A stretch of 63,973 nucleotides of DNA, counting the filler, from Octopus bimaculoides (Eukaryota), in assembly GCF_001194135.2 (NCBI RefSeq). It is 4 parts of 4 records of this genome, joined end to end, with 100 filler letters (N's around TTAATTAATTAA, not from the genome) between each part and the next. Parts side by side here need not be neighbours in the genome. Positions count along the whole stretch, not along the records: positions 45,574 to 58,726 come from NC_069000.1; 3 more parts are not named here. The stretch is one strand, 5' to 3'. Below are positions 49,601 to 54,777 of this stretch, piece after piece (the first letter of the stretch is position 1; the number at the start of each line of letters is the position of its first letter). The translations under genes were made by a program, and so were the position numbers. Below the pieces are notes generated by a model. That model was not told the origin of the DNA and did not search any database. It saw only the letters and a list, made by a program, of their open reading frames with translations.

Positions 49601-49608
49601 TATAAAAG
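49601..49608 (+). promoter_or_regulatory. TATA box of the putative Ig-domain gene
   Basis: CACTATAAAAG in a locally GC-richer, repeat-free patch ~230 nt upstream of a strong donor AA|GTGAGT at 49831/49832. Confidence 0.5.
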
Positions 49609-49629
49609 TGTTCTGCAGAGGAAGATTTG

Positions 49630-49831
49630 CGTCGAGCAGCATCGATCGTTTGTAGGAGGGATCCGTCTACATTTTATCGTGAAAATTGCCCTGTTGCATT
49701 ACTTTTTTTTTCTCTACCTGGGGGTTGTGGTGAAAGACGTTGTGTGGTAAATGAGACTGAAAAGACTGATGGCAGACACTTTGATTTTCAGCTAAACTCA
49801 TCGACTTTTCAAGTTACAGTTAGAAAGAAAA
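49630..49831 (+). other. Putative non-coding first exon (5' UTR)
   Basis: Starts ~30 nt after the TATA box (inferred), ends at the GTGAGT donor; can splice to acceptor TCTCAAG|AC at 51752, 7 nt before the ATG. Confidence 0.4.
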
Positions 49832-50122
49832 GTGAGTGTGGAAAGGGGTCTTCTTAGTGAATTTGTTGTACGGTGGATGAATGTAGCTAAAATGACCCGA
49901 GTGAATTATCCTGAACTAAGCGTGCGCCTGTAGTTGGATGGAGTAGTAGTTACCATGGTACTACTGTTGAGCAGGGTGACTCGGGATCTGAGGGGTTACT
50001 TGGTTGCCCCTGGATGCATTTCCTTCCAAGTGTTGCCATAATTTTCCTGTTGTTATAGTTGTTGTTTTTTATTGTTTACGCGTGTTTATGCTAATCCCCA
50101 ATATCCTTGATTATTTTTCTTG

Positions 50123-50335
50123 AGGCGGAGAACTGGTGGAATCGCGAGCAAGCCGGAAAAATGCTTAGCAACATTTTGTCCGGCTTTACATTCTGAGATC
50201 AAATGCCACCGAAGTTGACTTTGCCTTTCATCCTTTCGAGGTCGTTAAAATAAGTACCAGTTGAGTACTGGAGTGGACGAAATCGATTTCTCCTTTCCCC
50301 AAAATCTCTGGTTTTGTACCAAAATTAGAATGAAA
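50123..50335 (+). mobile_element. SINE family A copy
   Basis: GAGGCGGAGAACTGGTGGAATCG...CTGAGATCAAATGCC...TAAGTACCAGTTGAGTACTGG. Confidence 0.85.
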
Positions 50336-50664
50336 TATATTTTTTCTTTTTATTACAGAAAAATTGTATGATGCAAATATTATTACTAAGATTTTGACAT
50401 TTGCAACATTCCTGCTTTTTATTAGCAATCTGCGTTAAGTATCTTGAAAAAAAAAACACAATATCAATCAGGTTAGTATTATGTTTTTCATTTTGTTTTC
50501 TGTGATTTTGTTATCCTTATATAAAATAGTATCGATTTAGTTTGTGCTTACTGCATTGCTTTTTTTAAAAAAATCTCATTGTTGTCGTAATCATCCTTCT
50601 TTAACGTTGAGATTAGCTTTCATCGAGCAAAGCATTCGATCATTTAATATCTTATCATTTCGGA

Positions 50665-50850
50665 CGTAGATCTTTTACTGGCTTCAGTCATTGGACTGCA
50701 ACCGTGCATGGACACAACATTGAAATACCGAAAACATAGACCTTACTATCTTATCTTTAAGCCTGGTACTATTCTATCGGTCACTTTTGTCGAATCTGTA
50801 TGTTATGGGGCCTTATAAAAGCAAAACCGGTTGTCAAGTGTAGGTTGGAG
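50665..50850 (-). mobile_element. SINE family B, diverged 3' half
   Basis: TTTTACTGGCTTCAGTCATTGGACTGC...TACTTATTCTATCGGTC...GGTTGTCAAG. Confidence 0.7.
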
Positions 50851-51387
50851 TCAAATATATCCATACATACATACATAATACATACATACATAATACATAC
50901 ATACATACATACATACATACATACAGGATTTCTTTCTAAATTGACAACGCTTTCTTTTCTATATATACATATATATATATAAAGGGCGAAGAAAGAGTAG
51001 TAAAAGAAAGCAGATGTTTTTTTACTGTTTCTCTCTCTTTCTCTTACTCGCTTTCTCTCTCTCTATCTATCGCTCTATCTTTCTCCCTTTCACTCTCTCC
51101 CTCTCTCTTTTTCATGGCATTTTTCGTAATCTTCCTTGTCGATCTTCACTTCTTCTCTCCCTTTCTTACTTTCATATCCTTATAACTTTCCCTCGCTTTC
51201 TCTCACTCTCTCGCGTTCTAAGTCGGCGTCTTTTTCTTAACCACAACACATCTCTCACTCATTCTTTCAATACTTTGAAATTCTCTATCTTCCTTTTCAT
51301 CCTTTGTACCTGCGTATGTGTATGCGTGCGCACCACCACGCGTGCGTGTGTGCGTGTGTGCGTTCGTTCATGTGTGTGTGTGCGTGA

Positions 51388-51436
<49 letters not shown>

Positions 51437-51758
51437 GGCTTAACTTCCTGTCGAACTGTTTTCTATATGTTCTACCTGCCTTCTTCTCGAAGCAGAAGAG
51501 AGGCCGAAGGAGAGAGAGAGAGAGAGAGAGAAAGTGAAAAAGAGAAAGATGCAACTATCTCAGCTTCACTCACACTTCAAGTATCACTCCCCCTCCCATT
51601 CACACTTACATATATTGCGCTTTCCTCTATTTTTGTTGTGTTTTGACTATTTCGACTACACTTTTTTGTATCGGACACATCATTTCGTAATAGTTCTGGT
51701 TTCTGGAAGCCGACAGTCATTTCTCCTTCTGCCTTATACTTGTCTCTCAAGACCAACA

Positions 51759-51807
51759 ATGTTGGTAGTTCTGATGTTACTGATGATGGCTTCTTACATT
51801 TCGACCC
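51759..51807 (+). CDS. Signal-peptide exon of the putative Ig-domain gene (MLVVLMLLMMASYIST-P)
   Basis: ACAATG context, hydrophobic 16 codons plus 1 nt, consensus donor C|GTAAGT; phase 1 joins 54454 in frame. Confidence 0.7.
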
Positions 51808-52245
51808 GTAAGTTAATATTAAGAGGAATAATATTGTCTTCATTTGCAACATTGAATCTTCTTGTCTTAGATATCACACTTTGATCGTCGCAAGACGCAC
51901 TATACGTACGCACACACACGTGCACACACACACACACATACATGCATGCATGCATACATACATATATACATACATAGATACATACATACATACATACATA
52001 CATACATACATACATACATACATACGAGCATTCTAGAGATGCAACTATATGCATTAGAATAATACATAAAGCAAAATATAACAAATCTGCACATATGCAT
52101 TCATACATAGATACATACACACAAAGATTTCCTGTTGTTGATGTTGAAATTCCAATAAAGGAGCCTTAGATCTAGGTTAGAAACCGGTTCTTTCTCTTTC
52201 TTTGACATACATACATACATACATACATACATATTCCCATATATA

Positions 52246-52285
<40 letters not shown>

Positions 52286-52849
52286 TGTGTGTGTATGTGT
52301 GTGTGTGATTGAAGGAAACGGAAGATACATTTATCACTAGTCTTTACTCAGTATGACGATCGTTTCGACCCCTTCTGCAACTGTCTCTTATGGGTAAGAT
52401 TTTGTGCATCGAGTTGTGTTCCATCAAACTGTGCCTTTTGTGAAGAGAAAATAATAAGCATCCATACATATATTTGTTCATTGTAGTTTGCCTGAATTGA
52501 GCTTTTTCTATTTCATTTATTGTACTTGTCTAACGTCTCAGATTCTACTTGCGCACATCTATGCGGTCTATGTGTTTCGTAAGAAAATTATAACTATACA
52601 TGCACGCATACAGACAGACACACACACACACATATACATTGGAAAATGTGTGAGATCCTTGGTACAGTTAGGTATATTTGAAAAAAAGAAAAAGAATGAC
52701 TTCACTGGTAGTTCTAATCCGTTTGATTTATTATTTTTTATTTTGTTAGTAATATAAATTTTACACTTTAGTTTGTAGATCTAGTAAGTTCTTTGTTAGC
52801 TTGGGTGGGGAAGATTTTAAAAAAACATTTCCTTGTTAATTTTCTGGAG

Positions 52850-53219
52850 AACTTTCTCGCATTCTCGCATTCAATCCTCCAGCAATCCCCCAAAATGAAT
52901 GCACTCATAAAAGACTCACAAATAATATATAGCAGACATCAAGCACCCAACCTTAAAAACAAAAACTGCTCACCAAGGCGAAATTAACATCTAGCATTGA
53001 AACAACGTAAGTTAAAAACTGCGGGGACCCTTGATGTGGAACCTGTGAATACATTGAAAATGGTGGACAAATCTCCTTTAAAAACAATGTAATTTTCAAA
53101 GTCAATGCAAACATGAAGTGCAAAACAAAAAGACTTAATTTACTGTGCAACTTGCCCACAATGTAAAGAGTACTATTTGGTGAAACTGGAAAGGGACTAC
53201 ATGACAGAGTTCGTGTACA
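52850..53219 (+). mobile_element. Penelope-like element linker and GIY-YIG remnant
   Basis: RHQAPNLK..LTKAK...KNCGDP*CGTC...NANMKCK..LIYCATCPQCKEYY.GETGKGLHDRVRVH; same subfamily type as 40684-41818. Confidence 0.75.
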
Positions 53220-53221
53220 TA

Positions 53222-53410
53222 CTGAATTAATGTCCAAGCATGACGAAGCTACCGAAAAAAAAACTCGATAAGATTTAAGATTTTAATCTTGAAATTAGTT
53301 AATTTGCAGTTAATGTGGAGTCTTTTTTTAATATCCCCTCACTAGCCTGCTTTCAATCGCATGTATGGAGCTTTTTTCGGTAGCTTCGTAATGCTTGGAC
53401 ATTAATTCAA
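53222..53410. mobile_element. 189-bp TA-flanked MITE (Tc1/mariner type) inserted in the PLE remnant
   Basis: 38-bp TIR TGAATTAATGTCCAAGCAT.ACGAAGCTACCGAAAAAA with one mismatch; TA on both sides. Confidence 0.85.
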
Positions 53411-53885
53411 TATGGAGGAGATAAGTCTTGTTTTGACTTTCTCCCTTAAAATACTTNNNNNNNNNNNNNNNNNNNNNNNNNNNNNNNNNNNNNNNNNNNN
53501 NNNNNNNNNNNNNNNNNNNNNNNNNNNNNNNNNNNNNNNNNNNNNNNNNNNNNNNNNNNNNNNNNNNNNNNNNNNNNNNNNNNNNNNNNNNNNNNNNNNN
53601 NNNNNNNNNNNNNNNNNNNNNNNNNNNNNNNNNNNNNNNNNNNNNNNNNNNNNNNNNNNNNNNNNNNNNNNNNNNNNNNNNNNNNNNNNNNNNNNNNNNN
53701 NNNNNNNNNNNNNNNNNNNNNNNNNNNNNNNNNNNNATATATATATATATATATATATATAATTATTAATTTAACATATAAATTGCTATAAATTGCTTTT
53801 TTCCATGCTAACTACCTGATGATTTTCATTAACATGATTTTTATCCTTATTTTATGTGTGTATATATACATACATATATACATGC

Positions 53886-53929
<44 letters not shown>

Positions 53930-54453
53930 ATTATGTATGTATGTCTATATATATAGAGAGAAAGAGTGAGTGAGAGAGAGAAATATCTATAAATAAATGT
54001 ATATTTATGTATATACATAAATAAAAGATATGTATCTACCTATGTATCCAAGTATATAAATGCAATTTTGACGGCACAGGTATGCTATTATAATAATAAA
54101 TACTAAAAACTAACTACAAAGTTTTATTTGTGGATAAATGTAATCCATATTCAAATGAACATGAACACCCGTTATTTTTAAATAGTCTTGTTTTACCTTC
54201 TTCTCTTCATCTTCCGTCTTCTTCTTCTTCTTCTTCTTCTTCTTCTTCTTCTTCTTCTTCTTCTTCTTCTTCTTCTTCTTCTTCTTTTTCTCATTGTTTT
54301 CTCTTTTGGTTTACTCTATCTTCTCTTTTTCGTCTCGTCTTTCAATTTCTTTTTCTCCTTTTCTTTCTCTCTCCTCCCCTCTCTTCTTCTGTAACTACAT
54401 TTATATTTTTTTTTATAACATCTTTCTCTGATTTAATGTTTCTTTCTCTACAG

Positions 54454-54777
54454 CTCTGGAAATTGCAGATATGAAGCCTTCTGAAACTATTGATTTGGGA
54501 TACACTACTGGAATAACCATAACATGTCGGCATAATCTAAAAAATTTTATTCACTTTGCTCTCGTTCAAAACCAGGATTATGTCGTTTTCAAAGTTTATC
54601 GTATCAAGGAGGAAAGACGTTTTAAGACAGTAACCAAGCGAAAGGGTTTTGACTGTACTCTAGATTTTATTAACAAAGATGAGATTATCTGCTGGAAATT
54701 TAATCCAGCTTGCGAGGATGCGACATATTACACATGTAAAACAAATCTCCAATCTTCAAAACCTAAAGTTTTAAAAA
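54454..54777 (+). CDS. V-like Ig-domain exon, phase 1-1, of a secreted or cell-surface IgSF protein
   Basis: Acceptor TTTCTTTCTCTACAG, donor AA|GTCAGT, 324 nt open; ITITC (B strand) ... DATYYTC (F-strand DxAxYxC) plus three extra Cys (GFDC, IICW, PAC). Confidence 0.8.

What the first reader, a model, noticed from the sequence alone, without database searches (positions are those of the whole stretch)
49601..54777. Unannotated-looking IgSF gene with an atypical, extra-cysteine V-like domain
Seen: TATA box, UTR exon, signal-peptide exon and a 324-nt phase 1-1 exon join in frame to MLVVLMLLMMASYIST-PLEIADMKPSET...ITITC...KGFDC...IICWKFNPACEDATYYTC. The B- and F-strand cysteines and DxAxYxC are present. 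The usual C-strand Trp is missing and there are three additional Cys. Established: phase 1-1 single-domain exons are typical of IgSF genes, and molluscs have lineage-specific diversified Ig-containing immune families such as FREPs. Inference: with the upstream Ig exon at 45934, this may be a tandem cluster of a cephalopod-specific Ig receptor family that I cannot assign to a named gene.
Basis: partly seen in the sequence, partly recalled or inferred. Interest (0 to 1): 0.72.

Follow-up and report, generated by a model that had tools for sequence, protein, structure and literature searches.

The report
Octopus-only two-Ig surface protein gene
The 324-base exon is real and encodes an unusual antibody-like (V-type) domain of an already predicted but uncharacterised Octopus bimaculoides gene, one of a tandem cluster of small surface proteins found so far only in octopuses; it is a moderately interesting lineage-specific family, not an unannotated gene.

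Summary
The core observation holds. ATG 51759, donor 51808, the 324-nt phase 1-1 exon at 54454-54777, five Cys and no C-strand Trp are all present. The assembly gap at 53457-53736 lies inside the intron and does not touch coding sequence.

The gene is not unannotated. It is LOC106880714 (XP_014786275.1, "uncharacterized protein", Octopus bimaculoides, chromosome CM046620.1).

An exhaustive HMMER search found 31 relatives. All named ones are from Octopus species, and many lie in a roughly 300-kb tandem cluster.

With a 30-sequence family alignment, AlphaFold2 gives a confident model (pLDDT 88.9). Its top 50 listed Foldseek matches are antibody V domains. Pfam does not detect the domain.

The usual family architecture is signal peptide, V-like domain A, C-like domain B, a short or Thr-rich stalk, then a C-terminal hydrophobic tail. 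The tail looks like a GPI signal in most members and a transmembrane segment in some.

The "upstream Ig exon" at 45934 is domain B of the neighbouring gene LOC106880713. It is not a copy of exon A.

This gene's own domain-B exon is probably hidden in the gap just right of the piece.

The extra cysteines are family-invariant. I infer a D-E strand staple and an A-B interdomain disulfide like that of rabbit kappa chains. Function is unknown; a membrane-tethered recognition molecule is the best guess.

The parts
51759..51807 (+). Start codon and signal-peptide coding part of the first coding exon of LOC106880714 (MLVVLMLLMMASYIST + 1 base; donor GTAAGT at 51808, phase 1). The 5' limit of the exon is unknown.
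   Evidence: The N-terminus MLLxMMxLMMASY is shared by paralogues P0008-P0010, P0012, P0017 and P0018. The exon and about 250 nt upstream are conserved in three paralogues. The upstream ATG at 51549 used by the NCBI model is absent in LOC106880715.
51808..54453 (+). Intron between the signal-peptide exon and exon A. It contains the assembly gap 53457-53736.
   Evidence: Its two ends match the two ends of the homologous intron in paralogues. The gap is present in the assembly record.
54454..54777 (+). Exon A: 324 nt, phase 1-1. It encodes the V-like Ig domain (domain A) with family-invariant C67, C79, C86, C94, P8, F65, K81, D88, Y92 and S101, and near-invariant C24.
   Evidence: AF2 pLDDT 88.9. 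Foldseek top 50 listed hits are all antibody V domains, TM-scores 0.55-0.69. Boundaries are conserved in paralogues.
58247..58411 (+). Conserved intron block that lies about 110-130 nt upstream of exon B in paralogues. It marks where this gene's exon B should follow.
   Evidence: matches 45663-45827 (LOC106880713), L003 11797-11926 (LOC106880708) and L002 14278-14365 (LOC106880715).
58415..58726 (.). Interspersed repeat inserted just after that block. It runs into the assembly gap that ends the piece (window-equivalent 58727-60692).
   Evidence: 11 copies or fragments in L001-L003; N run at L001 17179-19144.
45934..46235 (+). Exon B (C-like Ig domain B) of the upstream paralogue LOC106880713, ending in an in-frame TAA at 46233-46235. 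It is part of the cluster, not of the gene in the finding.
   Evidence: 100% identical to P0012 residues 124-223. The A2 alignment has invariant C24, W39 and C86 and near-invariant C62. Profile hits are to Ig constant domains.
50359..50438 (+). Paralogous tail exon (phase-1 acceptor; ..KLYDANIITKILTFATFLLFISNLR*).
   Evidence: tblastn matches to the tails of P0003, P0004, P0008 and P0023. The block 50031-50528 is 82% identical to the block around LOC106880714's own tail exon, which lies outside the piece.

Best explanation
The finding is the signal-peptide exon plus the first Ig-domain exon of LOC106880714. This gene belongs to an Octopus-restricted, tandemly duplicated family of small secreted-pathway proteins.

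The family plan has five parts:
- an N-terminal signal peptide;
- domain A, a V-type Ig fold that lacks the C-strand Trp and carries five conserved Cys;
- domain B, a C-type Ig-like domain with three conserved Cys;
- a short acidic or Thr-rich stalk;
- a C-terminal hydrophobic segment that ends the protein in most members (GPI-attachment-signal-like) or is followed by a cytoplasmic tail in a few (transmembrane).

Shown here: the gene identity, the exon structure, the Ig-V fold prediction, the family, the cluster and the conserved cysteines.

Inferred:
(1) C24-C94 is the canonical B-F disulfide.
(2) C67 and C79 face each other across the D-E hairpin and form a second, intradomain disulfide.
(3) The odd C86, eight residues before the F-strand Cys, pairs with the odd middle Cys of domain B. 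This would lock A to B, as Cys80-Cys171 does in rabbit kappa light chains.
(4) This gene's own exon B lies in the assembly gap right of the piece, so the annotated A-plus-tail model is incomplete.
(5) The protein is displayed on the cell surface. Its V-like domain, most variable in the C'-C'' region, acts as a ligand or counter-receptor binding module, and signalling, if any, goes through partner proteins. The family diversifies by gene birth and death.

Whether the ligands are self (adhesion, wiring) or non-self (immunity) is not known.
For: - Identity: P0003 = XP_014786275.1 is 100% identical over the exon. The window equals L001 + 41548 with 0 mismatches.
- Family: 31 relatives, all named ones from O. 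bimaculoides, O. vulgaris or O. sinensis.
- Cluster on CM046620.1 at 16.04-16.34 Mb, with all mapped A and B exons in the same orientation. A second locus lies at 43.43 Mb.
- Fold: AF2 with the 30-sequence alignment gives pLDDT 88.9 and pTM 0.82, with eight listed strands from A to F and two short beta stretches after F. The top 50 listed Foldseek PDB hits are all VHH or VH domains, E about 2e-4, TM-scores 0.55-0.69. The A1 profile against PDB hits TCR Valpha full-length (E 0.006), then V-kappa, CEA and sidekick Ig domains.
- Cysteines: C67, C79, C86 and C94 are invariant and C24 is present in 28 of 30 sequences. In the model D is 65-70 and E is 76-82, so residues 67 and 79 are cross-strand partners.
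- Domain B has three conserved Cys. Its profile hits rabbit C-kappa domains, with the middle Cys aligned to the extra rabbit Cys. Domain A hits many rabbit V-kappa chains over the C86...C94 segment.
- Tails: paralogues end in ..ANIITKILxFAxxLxVIGxxx*, or ..SGSGVQFSKWVLIINLILLLLDVAVSR*. P0026 has a transmembrane segment plus a cytoplasmic tail.
- Hidden exon B: the conserved pre-exon-B block at 58247-58411 is followed by a repeat and then the gap. The best O. vulgaris match (69% identity) is followed by a domain B.
Against: - No transcript evidence could be consulted, so splicing and expression of this particular copy are unproven.
- Pfam does not recognise either domain above threshold.
- The invariant Trp of Ig domains is absent.
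The disulfide map is therefore inference.
- This gene's own tail exon reads on for 23 residues past the hydrophobic stretch (HEVSRKRKTES...). It looks more like a transmembrane anchor than a GPI signal, or it may be decaying.
- The neighbour LOC106880713 has a stop before its anchor. Some copies may thus be soluble or degenerating.
- Function is not tested at all.
Confidence: 0.7

Rival explanations
1. One reading: a previously unannotated three-exon start (TATA box at 49602, non-coding exon 49601-49831, signal-peptide exon, Ig exon) of a cephalopod-specific Ig receptor, with the exon at 45934 being another member's copy of the same kind of exon.
For: The signal-peptide and Ig exons are correct. 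An AG preceded by a pyrimidine tract at 51750-51751 is conserved in three paralogues, so an upstream non-coding exon is not excluded. The tandem cluster is real.
Against: The gene is annotated. The segment 49601-49831 has no counterpart in paralogous units and lies upstream of a tail exon belonging to the previous unit. The NCBI model has no splice at 51752. The exon at 45934 encodes a different domain type.
Confidence: 0.1
2. The copy in the window is a decaying or non-functional duplicate. Exon A is still intact, but the gene has lost exon B and its proper stop in the tail exon, and it is not expressed as a useful protein.
For: There is no exon B in the 3.95 kb sequenced after exon A, whereas the A-to-B intron is 1.3-2.1 kb in paralogues. 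The tail exon has lost the two stops seen in the paralogous exon. Repeats are inserted in the intron. The neighbour LOC106880713 carries a nonsense codon 8 nt before a conserved donor. Birth-and-death families usually contain pseudogenes.
Against: Every family-invariant residue of domain A is intact, and the start codon, signal peptide and both splice sites are preserved. The pre-exon-B intron block is present right at the edge of a 1,966-N gap, which is enough to hide exon B.
Confidence: 0.15
3. A single-domain, Thy-1-like GPI protein made by reading through the donor at 54777 to the TAG at 54837, which gives the hydrophobic tail SQFYKLFFSLLFLVFFFHHYL.
For: The read-through frame is open for 20 more codons and is hydrophobic. 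Thy-1 is also a single V-like domain without the C-strand Trp and with an extra disulfide (my own knowledge; review PMC6497726).
Against: The donor position and phase are conserved in all paralogues, and their read-through tails are short and not hydrophobic (P0007, P0014, P0025). The tail comes from a T-rich intron. The annotated product splices at 54777.
Confidence: 0.03

Closest known systems
Immunoglobulin V-set domains (antibody VH/VHH, TCR V-alpha, V-kappa)
   Same: The predicted fold has eight listed strands from A to F, including C' and C'', plus short beta stretches after F. B- and F-strand cysteines are present, as is the D-x-A-x-Y-x-C motif before strand F. The exon is a phase 1-1 single-domain exon.
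   Different: There is no C-strand Trp (Phe/Leu instead). Three extra invariant Cys are present. The FG loop is short (about 5 residues). Sequence identity to V domains is only 9-16%. The domain scores below all Pfam Ig thresholds. There is no sign of somatic rearrangement elements.
Rabbit kappa light chain (Cys80 in V paired with Cys171 in C; my own knowledge of the rabbit K1 isotype)
   Same: A V-like domain has an extra Cys exactly eight residues before the F-strand Cys. It is followed by a C-like domain with an extra Cys between strands D and E. Both family profiles pick rabbit light chains at these segments.
   Different: The resemblance is analogy only. The E-values are weak (0.017-2). 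The family is a single chain that ends in a membrane anchor, with no heavy-chain partner. The disulfide itself is not demonstrated.
Small V-C2 surface glycoproteins of the CD2 family (CD48, CD58 GPI isoform) and other GPI-linked IgSF adhesion molecules (my own knowledge)
   Same: Signal peptide, membrane-distal V-like domain, membrane-proximal C-like domain, a GPI or transmembrane anchor that varies between members or isoforms, and genes in tandem clusters.
   Different: No detectable sequence relationship. The cysteine pattern differs (CD2-family V domains lack the B-F disulfide, whereas this family keeps it and adds more). The relation was not tested by profile comparison here.
Thy-1 / CD90
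   Same: As annotated, the gene gives one V-like domain plus a hydrophobic tail. The C-strand Trp is missing and there is an additional disulfide (PMC6497726; my own knowledge).
   Different: hhalign probability is 3.2%. The family norm is two domains. This gene's tail has a 23-residue extension after the hydrophobic stretch.
Molluscan FREPs (fibrinogen-related proteins with IgSF domains)
   Same: A lineage-specific molluscan family with N-terminal IgSF domains and multiple gene copies.
   Different: No fibrinogen domain in any of the 18 members scanned against Pfam. The C-terminus is a membrane anchor rather than a lectin-like domain.

Membership tests
Ig superfamily, V-set domain | Two-sheet beta sandwich with the V-type strand complement (A, B, C, C', C'', D, E, F, G) | tested here: met
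   AF2 with the family alignment gives pLDDT 88.9, with strands at 2-7, 19-25, 33-38, 42-50, 55-61, 65-70, 76-82 and 91-96 plus short beta stretches after F. The top 50 listed Foldseek PDB hits are all V domains.
Ig superfamily, V-set domain | Conserved Cys in strand B and strand F (intersheet disulfide) | tested here: met
   C24 is present in 28 of 30 sequences and C94 is invariant. They align to the B and F cysteines of TCR V-alpha. The bond itself is not measured.
Ig superfamily, V-set domain | Invariant Trp in strand C packing on the disulfide | tested here: not met
   The A1 alignment has no Trp column in strand C. The consensus is F-x-L-x-R-N, and the TCR Trp aligns to Leu/Val.
Ig superfamily, V-set domain | D-x-[GA]-x-Y-x-C motif leading into strand F | tested here: met
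   D88, Y92 and C94 are invariant.
Ig superfamily, V-set domain | Score above the Pfam gathering threshold for an Ig-clan model | tested here: not met
   The window product gives 0 hits at E<=10. The best hit in the family is P0030 against ig PF00047, 21.7 bits against a cut-off of 21.8; V-set scores 15.5 against 26. P0018 against Ig_2 scores 15.7 against 27.
FREP (fibrinogen-related protein) | C-terminal fibrinogen-related domain after the IgSF domain(s) | tested here: not met
   No fibrinogen hit in any scanned member. The proteins end in hydrophobic anchors.
Thy-1 / CD90 | Sequence homology to Thy-1 across the domain | tested here: not met
GPI-anchored surface proteins | N-terminal signal peptide | tested here: met
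   MLVVLMLLMMASYIST has mean Kyte-Doolittle hydropathy 2.12 and is conserved as the N-terminus of paralogues. No dedicated predictor was available.
GPI-anchored surface proteins | C-terminal signal: small omega residues, a short spacer, then a hydrophobic stretch that ends the protein | tested here: inconclusive
   Met by eye in paralogues (P0004, P0008, P0023, P0024, P0031-P0034). This gene's own tail continues for 23 residues (HEVSRKRK...), and its tail exon lies outside the piece. No GPI predictor was available.
GPI-anchored surface proteins | Release from membranes by PI-specific phospholipase C, or lipid anchor seen by mass spectrometry | not testable with these tools
   Experimental.
Rabbit-kappa-like V-C interdomain disulfide | Unpaired Cys eight residues before the F-strand Cys in the V domain, plus an unpaired Cys in the following C domain | tested here: met
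   A has C86 and C94. B has three Cys, and C62 aligns to the extra Cys of rabbit C-kappa.
Rabbit-kappa-like V-C interdomain disulfide | The two cysteines are within bonding distance in the folded two-domain protein | not tested

The most novel reading that the evidence does not exclude
The cluster is an Octopus-specific, rapidly turning-over repertoire of V-C recognition molecules. It would be a germline-diversified receptor family for non-self or for cell identity, built on a Trp-less, five-cysteine V domain covalently locked to its C domain. It would thus be an independent invention of a V-C recognition module in a mollusc.
Probability: 0.2. Interest if true: 0.6.

Novelty: new variant of a known kind. 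Interest (0 to 1): 0.38.

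Why it matters
Cephalopods are known for lineage-specific expansions of surface and regulatory gene families, yet their Ig-superfamily repertoire is poorly described. Here a family of at least a dozen genes per Octopus genome escapes Pfam. It appears in databases only as "uncharacterized" or automatically as "Ig-like".

This work gives the family a confident fold, a domain plan, a conserved and unusual cysteine scheme with a testable disulfide map, and a genomic organisation of about 12-kb tandem units.

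If expression turns out to be in haemocytes, skin or suckers, or in neurons, the family would become a candidate for octopus immune or cell-recognition diversity.

It also shows concrete annotation problems:
- an N-terminal extension that is probably artefactual;
- an exon probably lost in an assembly gap;
- gene models in O. vulgaris that look fused, the largest spanning 144 kb.

Tried and rejected
- Pfam on the exon product and on the upstream exon product: no hit even at E<=10.
- Word-indexed protein search: nothing for the 124-aa product, although a 100% identical protein is in the collection. With the family alignment it returned only 2 proteins. The index is too sparse here, so the third search was not spent.
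- phmmer against PDB sequences with the single domain: only a chance ribosomal hit.
- Single-sequence AlphaFold2: useless, pLDDT 40.5. This cost one of the two structure jobs, so no A+B model could be made.
- Read-through GPI-tail idea and Thy-1 homology: rejected.
- Exon A and exon B as paralogous copies: rejected. BLASTP finds no similarity and hhalign probability is 0.4%.
- O. vulgaris orthologous DNA for dN/dS: not retrievable, because the gene model spans 144 kb.
- Literature: no paper mentions the LOC identifiers, and none describes an octopus V-set or GPI Ig family. The squid Sgp1/Thy-1 lead brought up only a review sentence. The SRA runs that hold two further relatives could not be assigned to a species.
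- Rfam and tRNA scans of the piece: nothing.

Full report
**1. The observation**

Reading the sequence and joining the pieces confirms the coding part of the finding.
- An ATG at 51759 sits in a good context (A at -3).
- It opens 16 codons, MLVVLMLLMMASYIST, followed by one base and a GTAAGT donor at 51808.
- An acceptor (ttctttctctacag|) puts the next exon at 54454.
- That exon runs 324 nt to a GTCAGT donor at 54778.
- The two exons join in phase 1 to give a 124-residue product.
- The domain has Cys at positions 24, 67, 79, 86 and 94 (numbered from Leu, the first full codon of the exon) and the motif D-A-T-Y-Y-T-C. It has no Trp in the region where strand C should be.

The TATA-like motif (49602-49608) and a GTGAGT after 49831 are also there. 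They are only motifs.

**2. The gap**

The N run at 53457-53736 is a gap of the public assembly itself. The same run is in the record fetched as L001, which matches the piece base for base (0 mismatches in 13,153).

The gap lies inside the intron 51808-54453. The first ~200 nt of that intron match the sequence that follows the signal-peptide exon of three paralogues. The last ~380 nt match the sequence that precedes exon A of four paralogues. In every complete paralogue the signal peptide joins straight to domain A.

So the two sides of the gap are the two ends of one intron. Reading frame across the gap is not an issue, and nothing suggests an exon hidden in it.

**3. What the exon is**

Three first tests all failed:
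- Pfam;
- a word-indexed protein search;
- a single-sequence PDB search.

An exhaustive HMMER search of 1.84 billion representatives then found 32 proteins with E <= 0.001. I treat 31 as real relatives and one, bacterial P0029, as spurious.

One hit (P0003) is 100% identical over the exon. It is XP_014786275.1, "uncharacterized protein LOC106880714 [Octopus bimaculoides]", on chromosome CM046620.1 of GCA_001194135.2. The gene is therefore already predicted.

The NCBI model uses the same donor at 51808, the same exon 54454-54777 and the same phase. After K-V-L-K it splices to a tail exon about 7.6 kb downstream (window-equivalent 62360-62506), beyond the right edge of the piece.

It starts at an ATG at 51549 and runs without a break into the signal-peptide exon. 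That 70-residue extension passes through low-complexity sequence and is not shared by any paralogue. The ATG itself is missing in LOC106880715, although the surrounding 250 nt are about 85-90% conserved.

**4. The family and its plan**

All named relatives come from O. bimaculoides, O. vulgaris or O. sinensis. Two further ones come from short assembled contigs of SRA runs whose species I could not determine.

Complete members have five parts:
- a signal peptide (MLLxMMxLMMASY...);
- domain A (about 107 residues, the domain of the finding);
- domain B (about 100 residues: ..F-R-C-x-A..F-x-W..C..Y-x-Y..I-T-C);
- a short acidic linker or a Thr-rich stretch;
- a C-terminal hydrophobic segment.

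In most members the hydrophobic segment ends the protein. Examples are ..NADKLCDANIITKILTFATILFVIGNLL* and ..VSGSGVQFSKWVLIINLILLLLDVAVSR*. That is the pattern of a GPI-attachment signal. P0026 instead has a transmembrane segment and a 30-residue cytoplasmic tail.

It is domain B of the upstream neighbour, whose signal-peptide exon and exon A lie left of the piece. Domains A and B are not detectably related to each other.

**5. Is domain A an Ig domain?**

A profile of 30 domain-A sequences (A1) searched against PDB sequences gave marginal but coherent hits.
- The best are TCR V-alpha domains, aligned over positions 10-96 (E 0.006-0.03).
- The B-strand Cys and the F-strand E-D-x-A-x-Y-x-C motif are in register.
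- Antibody V-kappa domains, CEA and sidekick Ig domains follow.

AlphaFold2 without an alignment was uninformative (pLDDT 40.5). With A1 it gave pLDDT 88.9 and pTM 0.82. The model is all-beta, with eight listed strands at 2-7, 19-25, 33-38, 42-50, 55-61, 65-70, 76-82 and 91-96 and two short beta stretches after F. This is the V-type order A, B, C, C', C'', D, E, F with a short G region.

Foldseek against the PDB returned V domains only among its 50 listed hits (nanobodies, VH). Probability is 1.00, E is 2e-4 to 1.4e-3 and TM-scores are 0.55-0.69.

Pfam remains blind. The best score in the family is 21.7 bits for 'ig', against a cut-off of 21.8, in P0030.

It lacks the C-strand Trp; the family consensus there is F-x-L-x-R-N.

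**6. The extra cysteines**

C67, C79, C86 and C94 are invariant in 30 sequences. C24 is present in 28.

C24 (strand B) and C94 (strand F) are the canonical pair.

In the model, D is 65-70 and E is 76-82, linked by a five-residue turn. Residues 67 and 79 are therefore opposite each other in the hairpin (67 + 79 = 70 + 76). I infer a second, intradomain disulfide stapling D to E.

That leaves C86, in the E-F turn, eight residues before C94.

Domain B also has an odd number of conserved cysteines: C24, C62 and C86 of A2. Its profile hits Ig constant domains. The top-listed matches that name a species are rabbit kappa light chains, and C62 is aligned to their extra cysteine. The domain-A profile likewise picks many rabbit V-kappa chains across the C86...C94 segment.

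From my own knowledge, rabbit K1 kappa chains carry a V-C interdomain disulfide, Cys80-Cys171, and Cys80 lies eight residues before the F-strand Cys88.

I therefore propose an A:C86-B:C62 interdomain disulfide, giving four disulfides for eight cysteines. This is inference.

**7. Where is this gene's domain B?**

No exon B is found in the 3.95 kb between exon A and the right edge of the piece. In paralogues the A-to-B intron is 1.3-2.1 kb.

However, window 58247-58411 is homologous to the block that lies about 110-130 nt upstream of exon B in LOC106880713, -708 and -715 (72-83% identity). In this gene that block is followed at once by an interspersed repeat (58415-58726) and then by a 1,966-N gap.

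The best O. vulgaris match to this domain A (69% identity, inside the fused model CAI9737731.1) is followed by a domain B.

The most economical reading is that exon B sits in the gap and the annotated A-plus-tail product is incomplete. A copy that has truly lost exon B cannot be excluded.

**8.

It has a phase-1 acceptor and encodes ..KLYDANIITKILTFATFLLFISNLR*. The block around it (50031-50528) is 82% identical to the block around LOC106880714's own tail exon.

It is the tail exon of the preceding gene unit. The duplicated unit, about 12 kb long, runs signal-peptide exon, exon A, exon B, tail exon.

It has no counterpart in the other units. The conserved 250 nt directly upstream of the ATG are a more likely place for the promoter and 5' UTR.

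Because whole units were duplicated, conservation alone cannot distinguish promoter from intron. The AG at 51750-51751 is conserved too. Only transcript data can settle this.

**9. The cluster**

On CM046620.1 I located the following:

| Gene(s) | Position (Mb) |
|---|---|
| LOC128250272, overlapping a 298-aa gene (the length of LOC128250265 isoform X1) | 16.04 |
| LOC106880715 and a 286-aa neighbour | 16.23-16.25 |
| LOC106880713 and LOC106880714 | 16.29-16.31 |
| LOC106880708 and a 263-aa neighbour | 16.325-16.34 |

All mapped A and B exons in the 16.22-16.34 Mb part are on the same strand.

A second locus at 43.43 Mb holds a subfamily with a longer N-terminus and a Thr-rich stalk.

In O. 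vulgaris the relatives have consecutive identifiers (CAI9737727, -731 to -738). In O. sinensis they are LOC118766814 to -816.

Best matches between O. bimaculoides and the O. vulgaris/O. sinensis pair are only 62-69% identical. That fits fast divergence or gene turnover, although orthology was not established.

Among paralogues the most variable parts of domain A are the C'-C'' turn, strand C'' and the D-E turn. The most conserved are strands D, E and F and the E-F turn, which carry the cysteines.

**10. Mechanism and function**

Shown: a secretory signal, an Ig V-like domain, a family with a C-like second domain and membrane-anchoring tails, and tandem duplication.

Inferred: the product is displayed on the outer face of the plasma membrane with domain A distal. 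The anchor is GPI in most members. For this copy a transmembrane anchor is possible, because its tail exon reads on for 23 residues, HEVSRKRKTES...

As in other small V-C surface glycoproteins, domain A would bind a ligand or counter-receptor. Any signalling would depend on partners. I put about 0.7 on this structural and topological picture.

I put no more than about 0.2 on a specific immune-type diversified-receptor role. Neural or epithelial adhesion is at least as likely. No expression data could be consulted, and no paper in the searchable library mentions these genes.

**11. Comparison with known families**

- It works like, and folds like, an IgSF V domain. It fails two classical membership marks, the C-strand Trp and the Pfam threshold, and meets the others.
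- It is not a FREP, since there is no fibrinogen domain.
- It is not Thy-1.
- Its architecture is closest to V-C2 surface molecules such as the CD2 family. I did not test a sequence relationship with them.

**12. Verdict**

The exon and its peculiar cysteine pattern are real, and the Ig reading is right. The gene is already in the databases as an uncharacterised prediction, and the proposed promoter exon is unsupported.

The added value is the recognition of an Octopus-restricted, Pfam-invisible two-Ig family with a testable disulfide scheme and several annotation errors. Interest is moderate.

Noticed in passing
window 50359-50438 (+): An intact tail exon (..KLYDANIITKILTFATFLLFISNLR*, phase-1 acceptor) lies between the two genes. 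It belongs to the upstream unit (LOC106880713), although that gene's listed product stops before it.
   Followed up: partly
window 46233-46235: LOC106880713's exon B ends in TAA, 8 nt before a conserved phase-1 donor (A|GTAAGC). The paralogue LOC106880715 has AAA at the same place and splices on to the linker and tail. This is a nonsense change that would give an anchorless, secreted two-Ig protein.
   Followed up: partly
window 51549-51758: The 70-residue N-terminal extension of XP_014786275.1 ([10 protein letters not shown]...) uses an ATG that is absent in the paralogue LOC106880715. It runs through low-complexity sequence and is probably an annotation artefact that buries the signal peptide.
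   Followed up: yes
L001 20812-20958 (window-equivalent 62360-62506, outside the piece): This gene's own tail exon lacks the two stop codons seen in the paralogous exon at 50436 and 50445 (TAA>GAA, TGA>CGA). The protein therefore continues HEVSRKRKTESTRLVLYNSFSFL, giving either a transmembrane-type anchor or a decaying GPI signal.
   Followed up: partly
window 55016-55251, 50116-50350 (reverse), 58415-58726, 50766-50912 (reverse): Two kinds of interspersed repeat have about ten copies or fragments each in the 88 kb of cluster sequence fetched. From memory they resemble the abundant octopus SINEs. Rfam and ARAGORN see no tRNA-like part.
   Followed up: partly
window 53218-53260 and 53372-53414: A 43-nt inverted repeat (95% complementary) lies just left of the assembly gap. 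(TA)n and mixed microsatellites lie just right of it, a likely reason for the gap.
   Followed up: no
window 57208-57507 (-) and 57328-57639 (+): Two overlapping open frames of about 100 codons lie on opposite strands in a G+C-richer stretch. The minus-strand one begins HYYMGMTANDFKGRYSQH, which from memory recalls a GIY-YIG motif, but Pfam finds nothing. It is probably a transposon relic.
   Followed up: partly
P0001 (726 aa), P0002 (1202 aa), P0004, P0006 (O. vulgaris): Some O. vulgaris models contain two to five A or A-B units in one protein. P0001 spans 144 kb of genome, so it is most likely a fusion of neighbouring genes. P0002, with five nearly identical A-B-Thr-rich repeats, might be a real multi-unit protein.
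   Followed up: no
L009 (CM046620.1 43.43 Mb); P0015, P0024, P0030-P0032: A second subfamily at a distant locus on the same chromosome has a conserved longer N-terminus (M-x-S-R-G-Y...W-x-S-x-x-L-P..LLMSMM). In the complete members (P0024, P0031, P0032) the C-terminus looks like a clear GPI signal, and P0031 also has a Thr-rich stalk.
   Followed up: no
tool behaviour: The word-indexed protein search missed a 100% identical protein and nearly the whole family. The exhaustive search found them, so negative results from the indexed search say little for eukaryotic proteins.
   Followed up: yes
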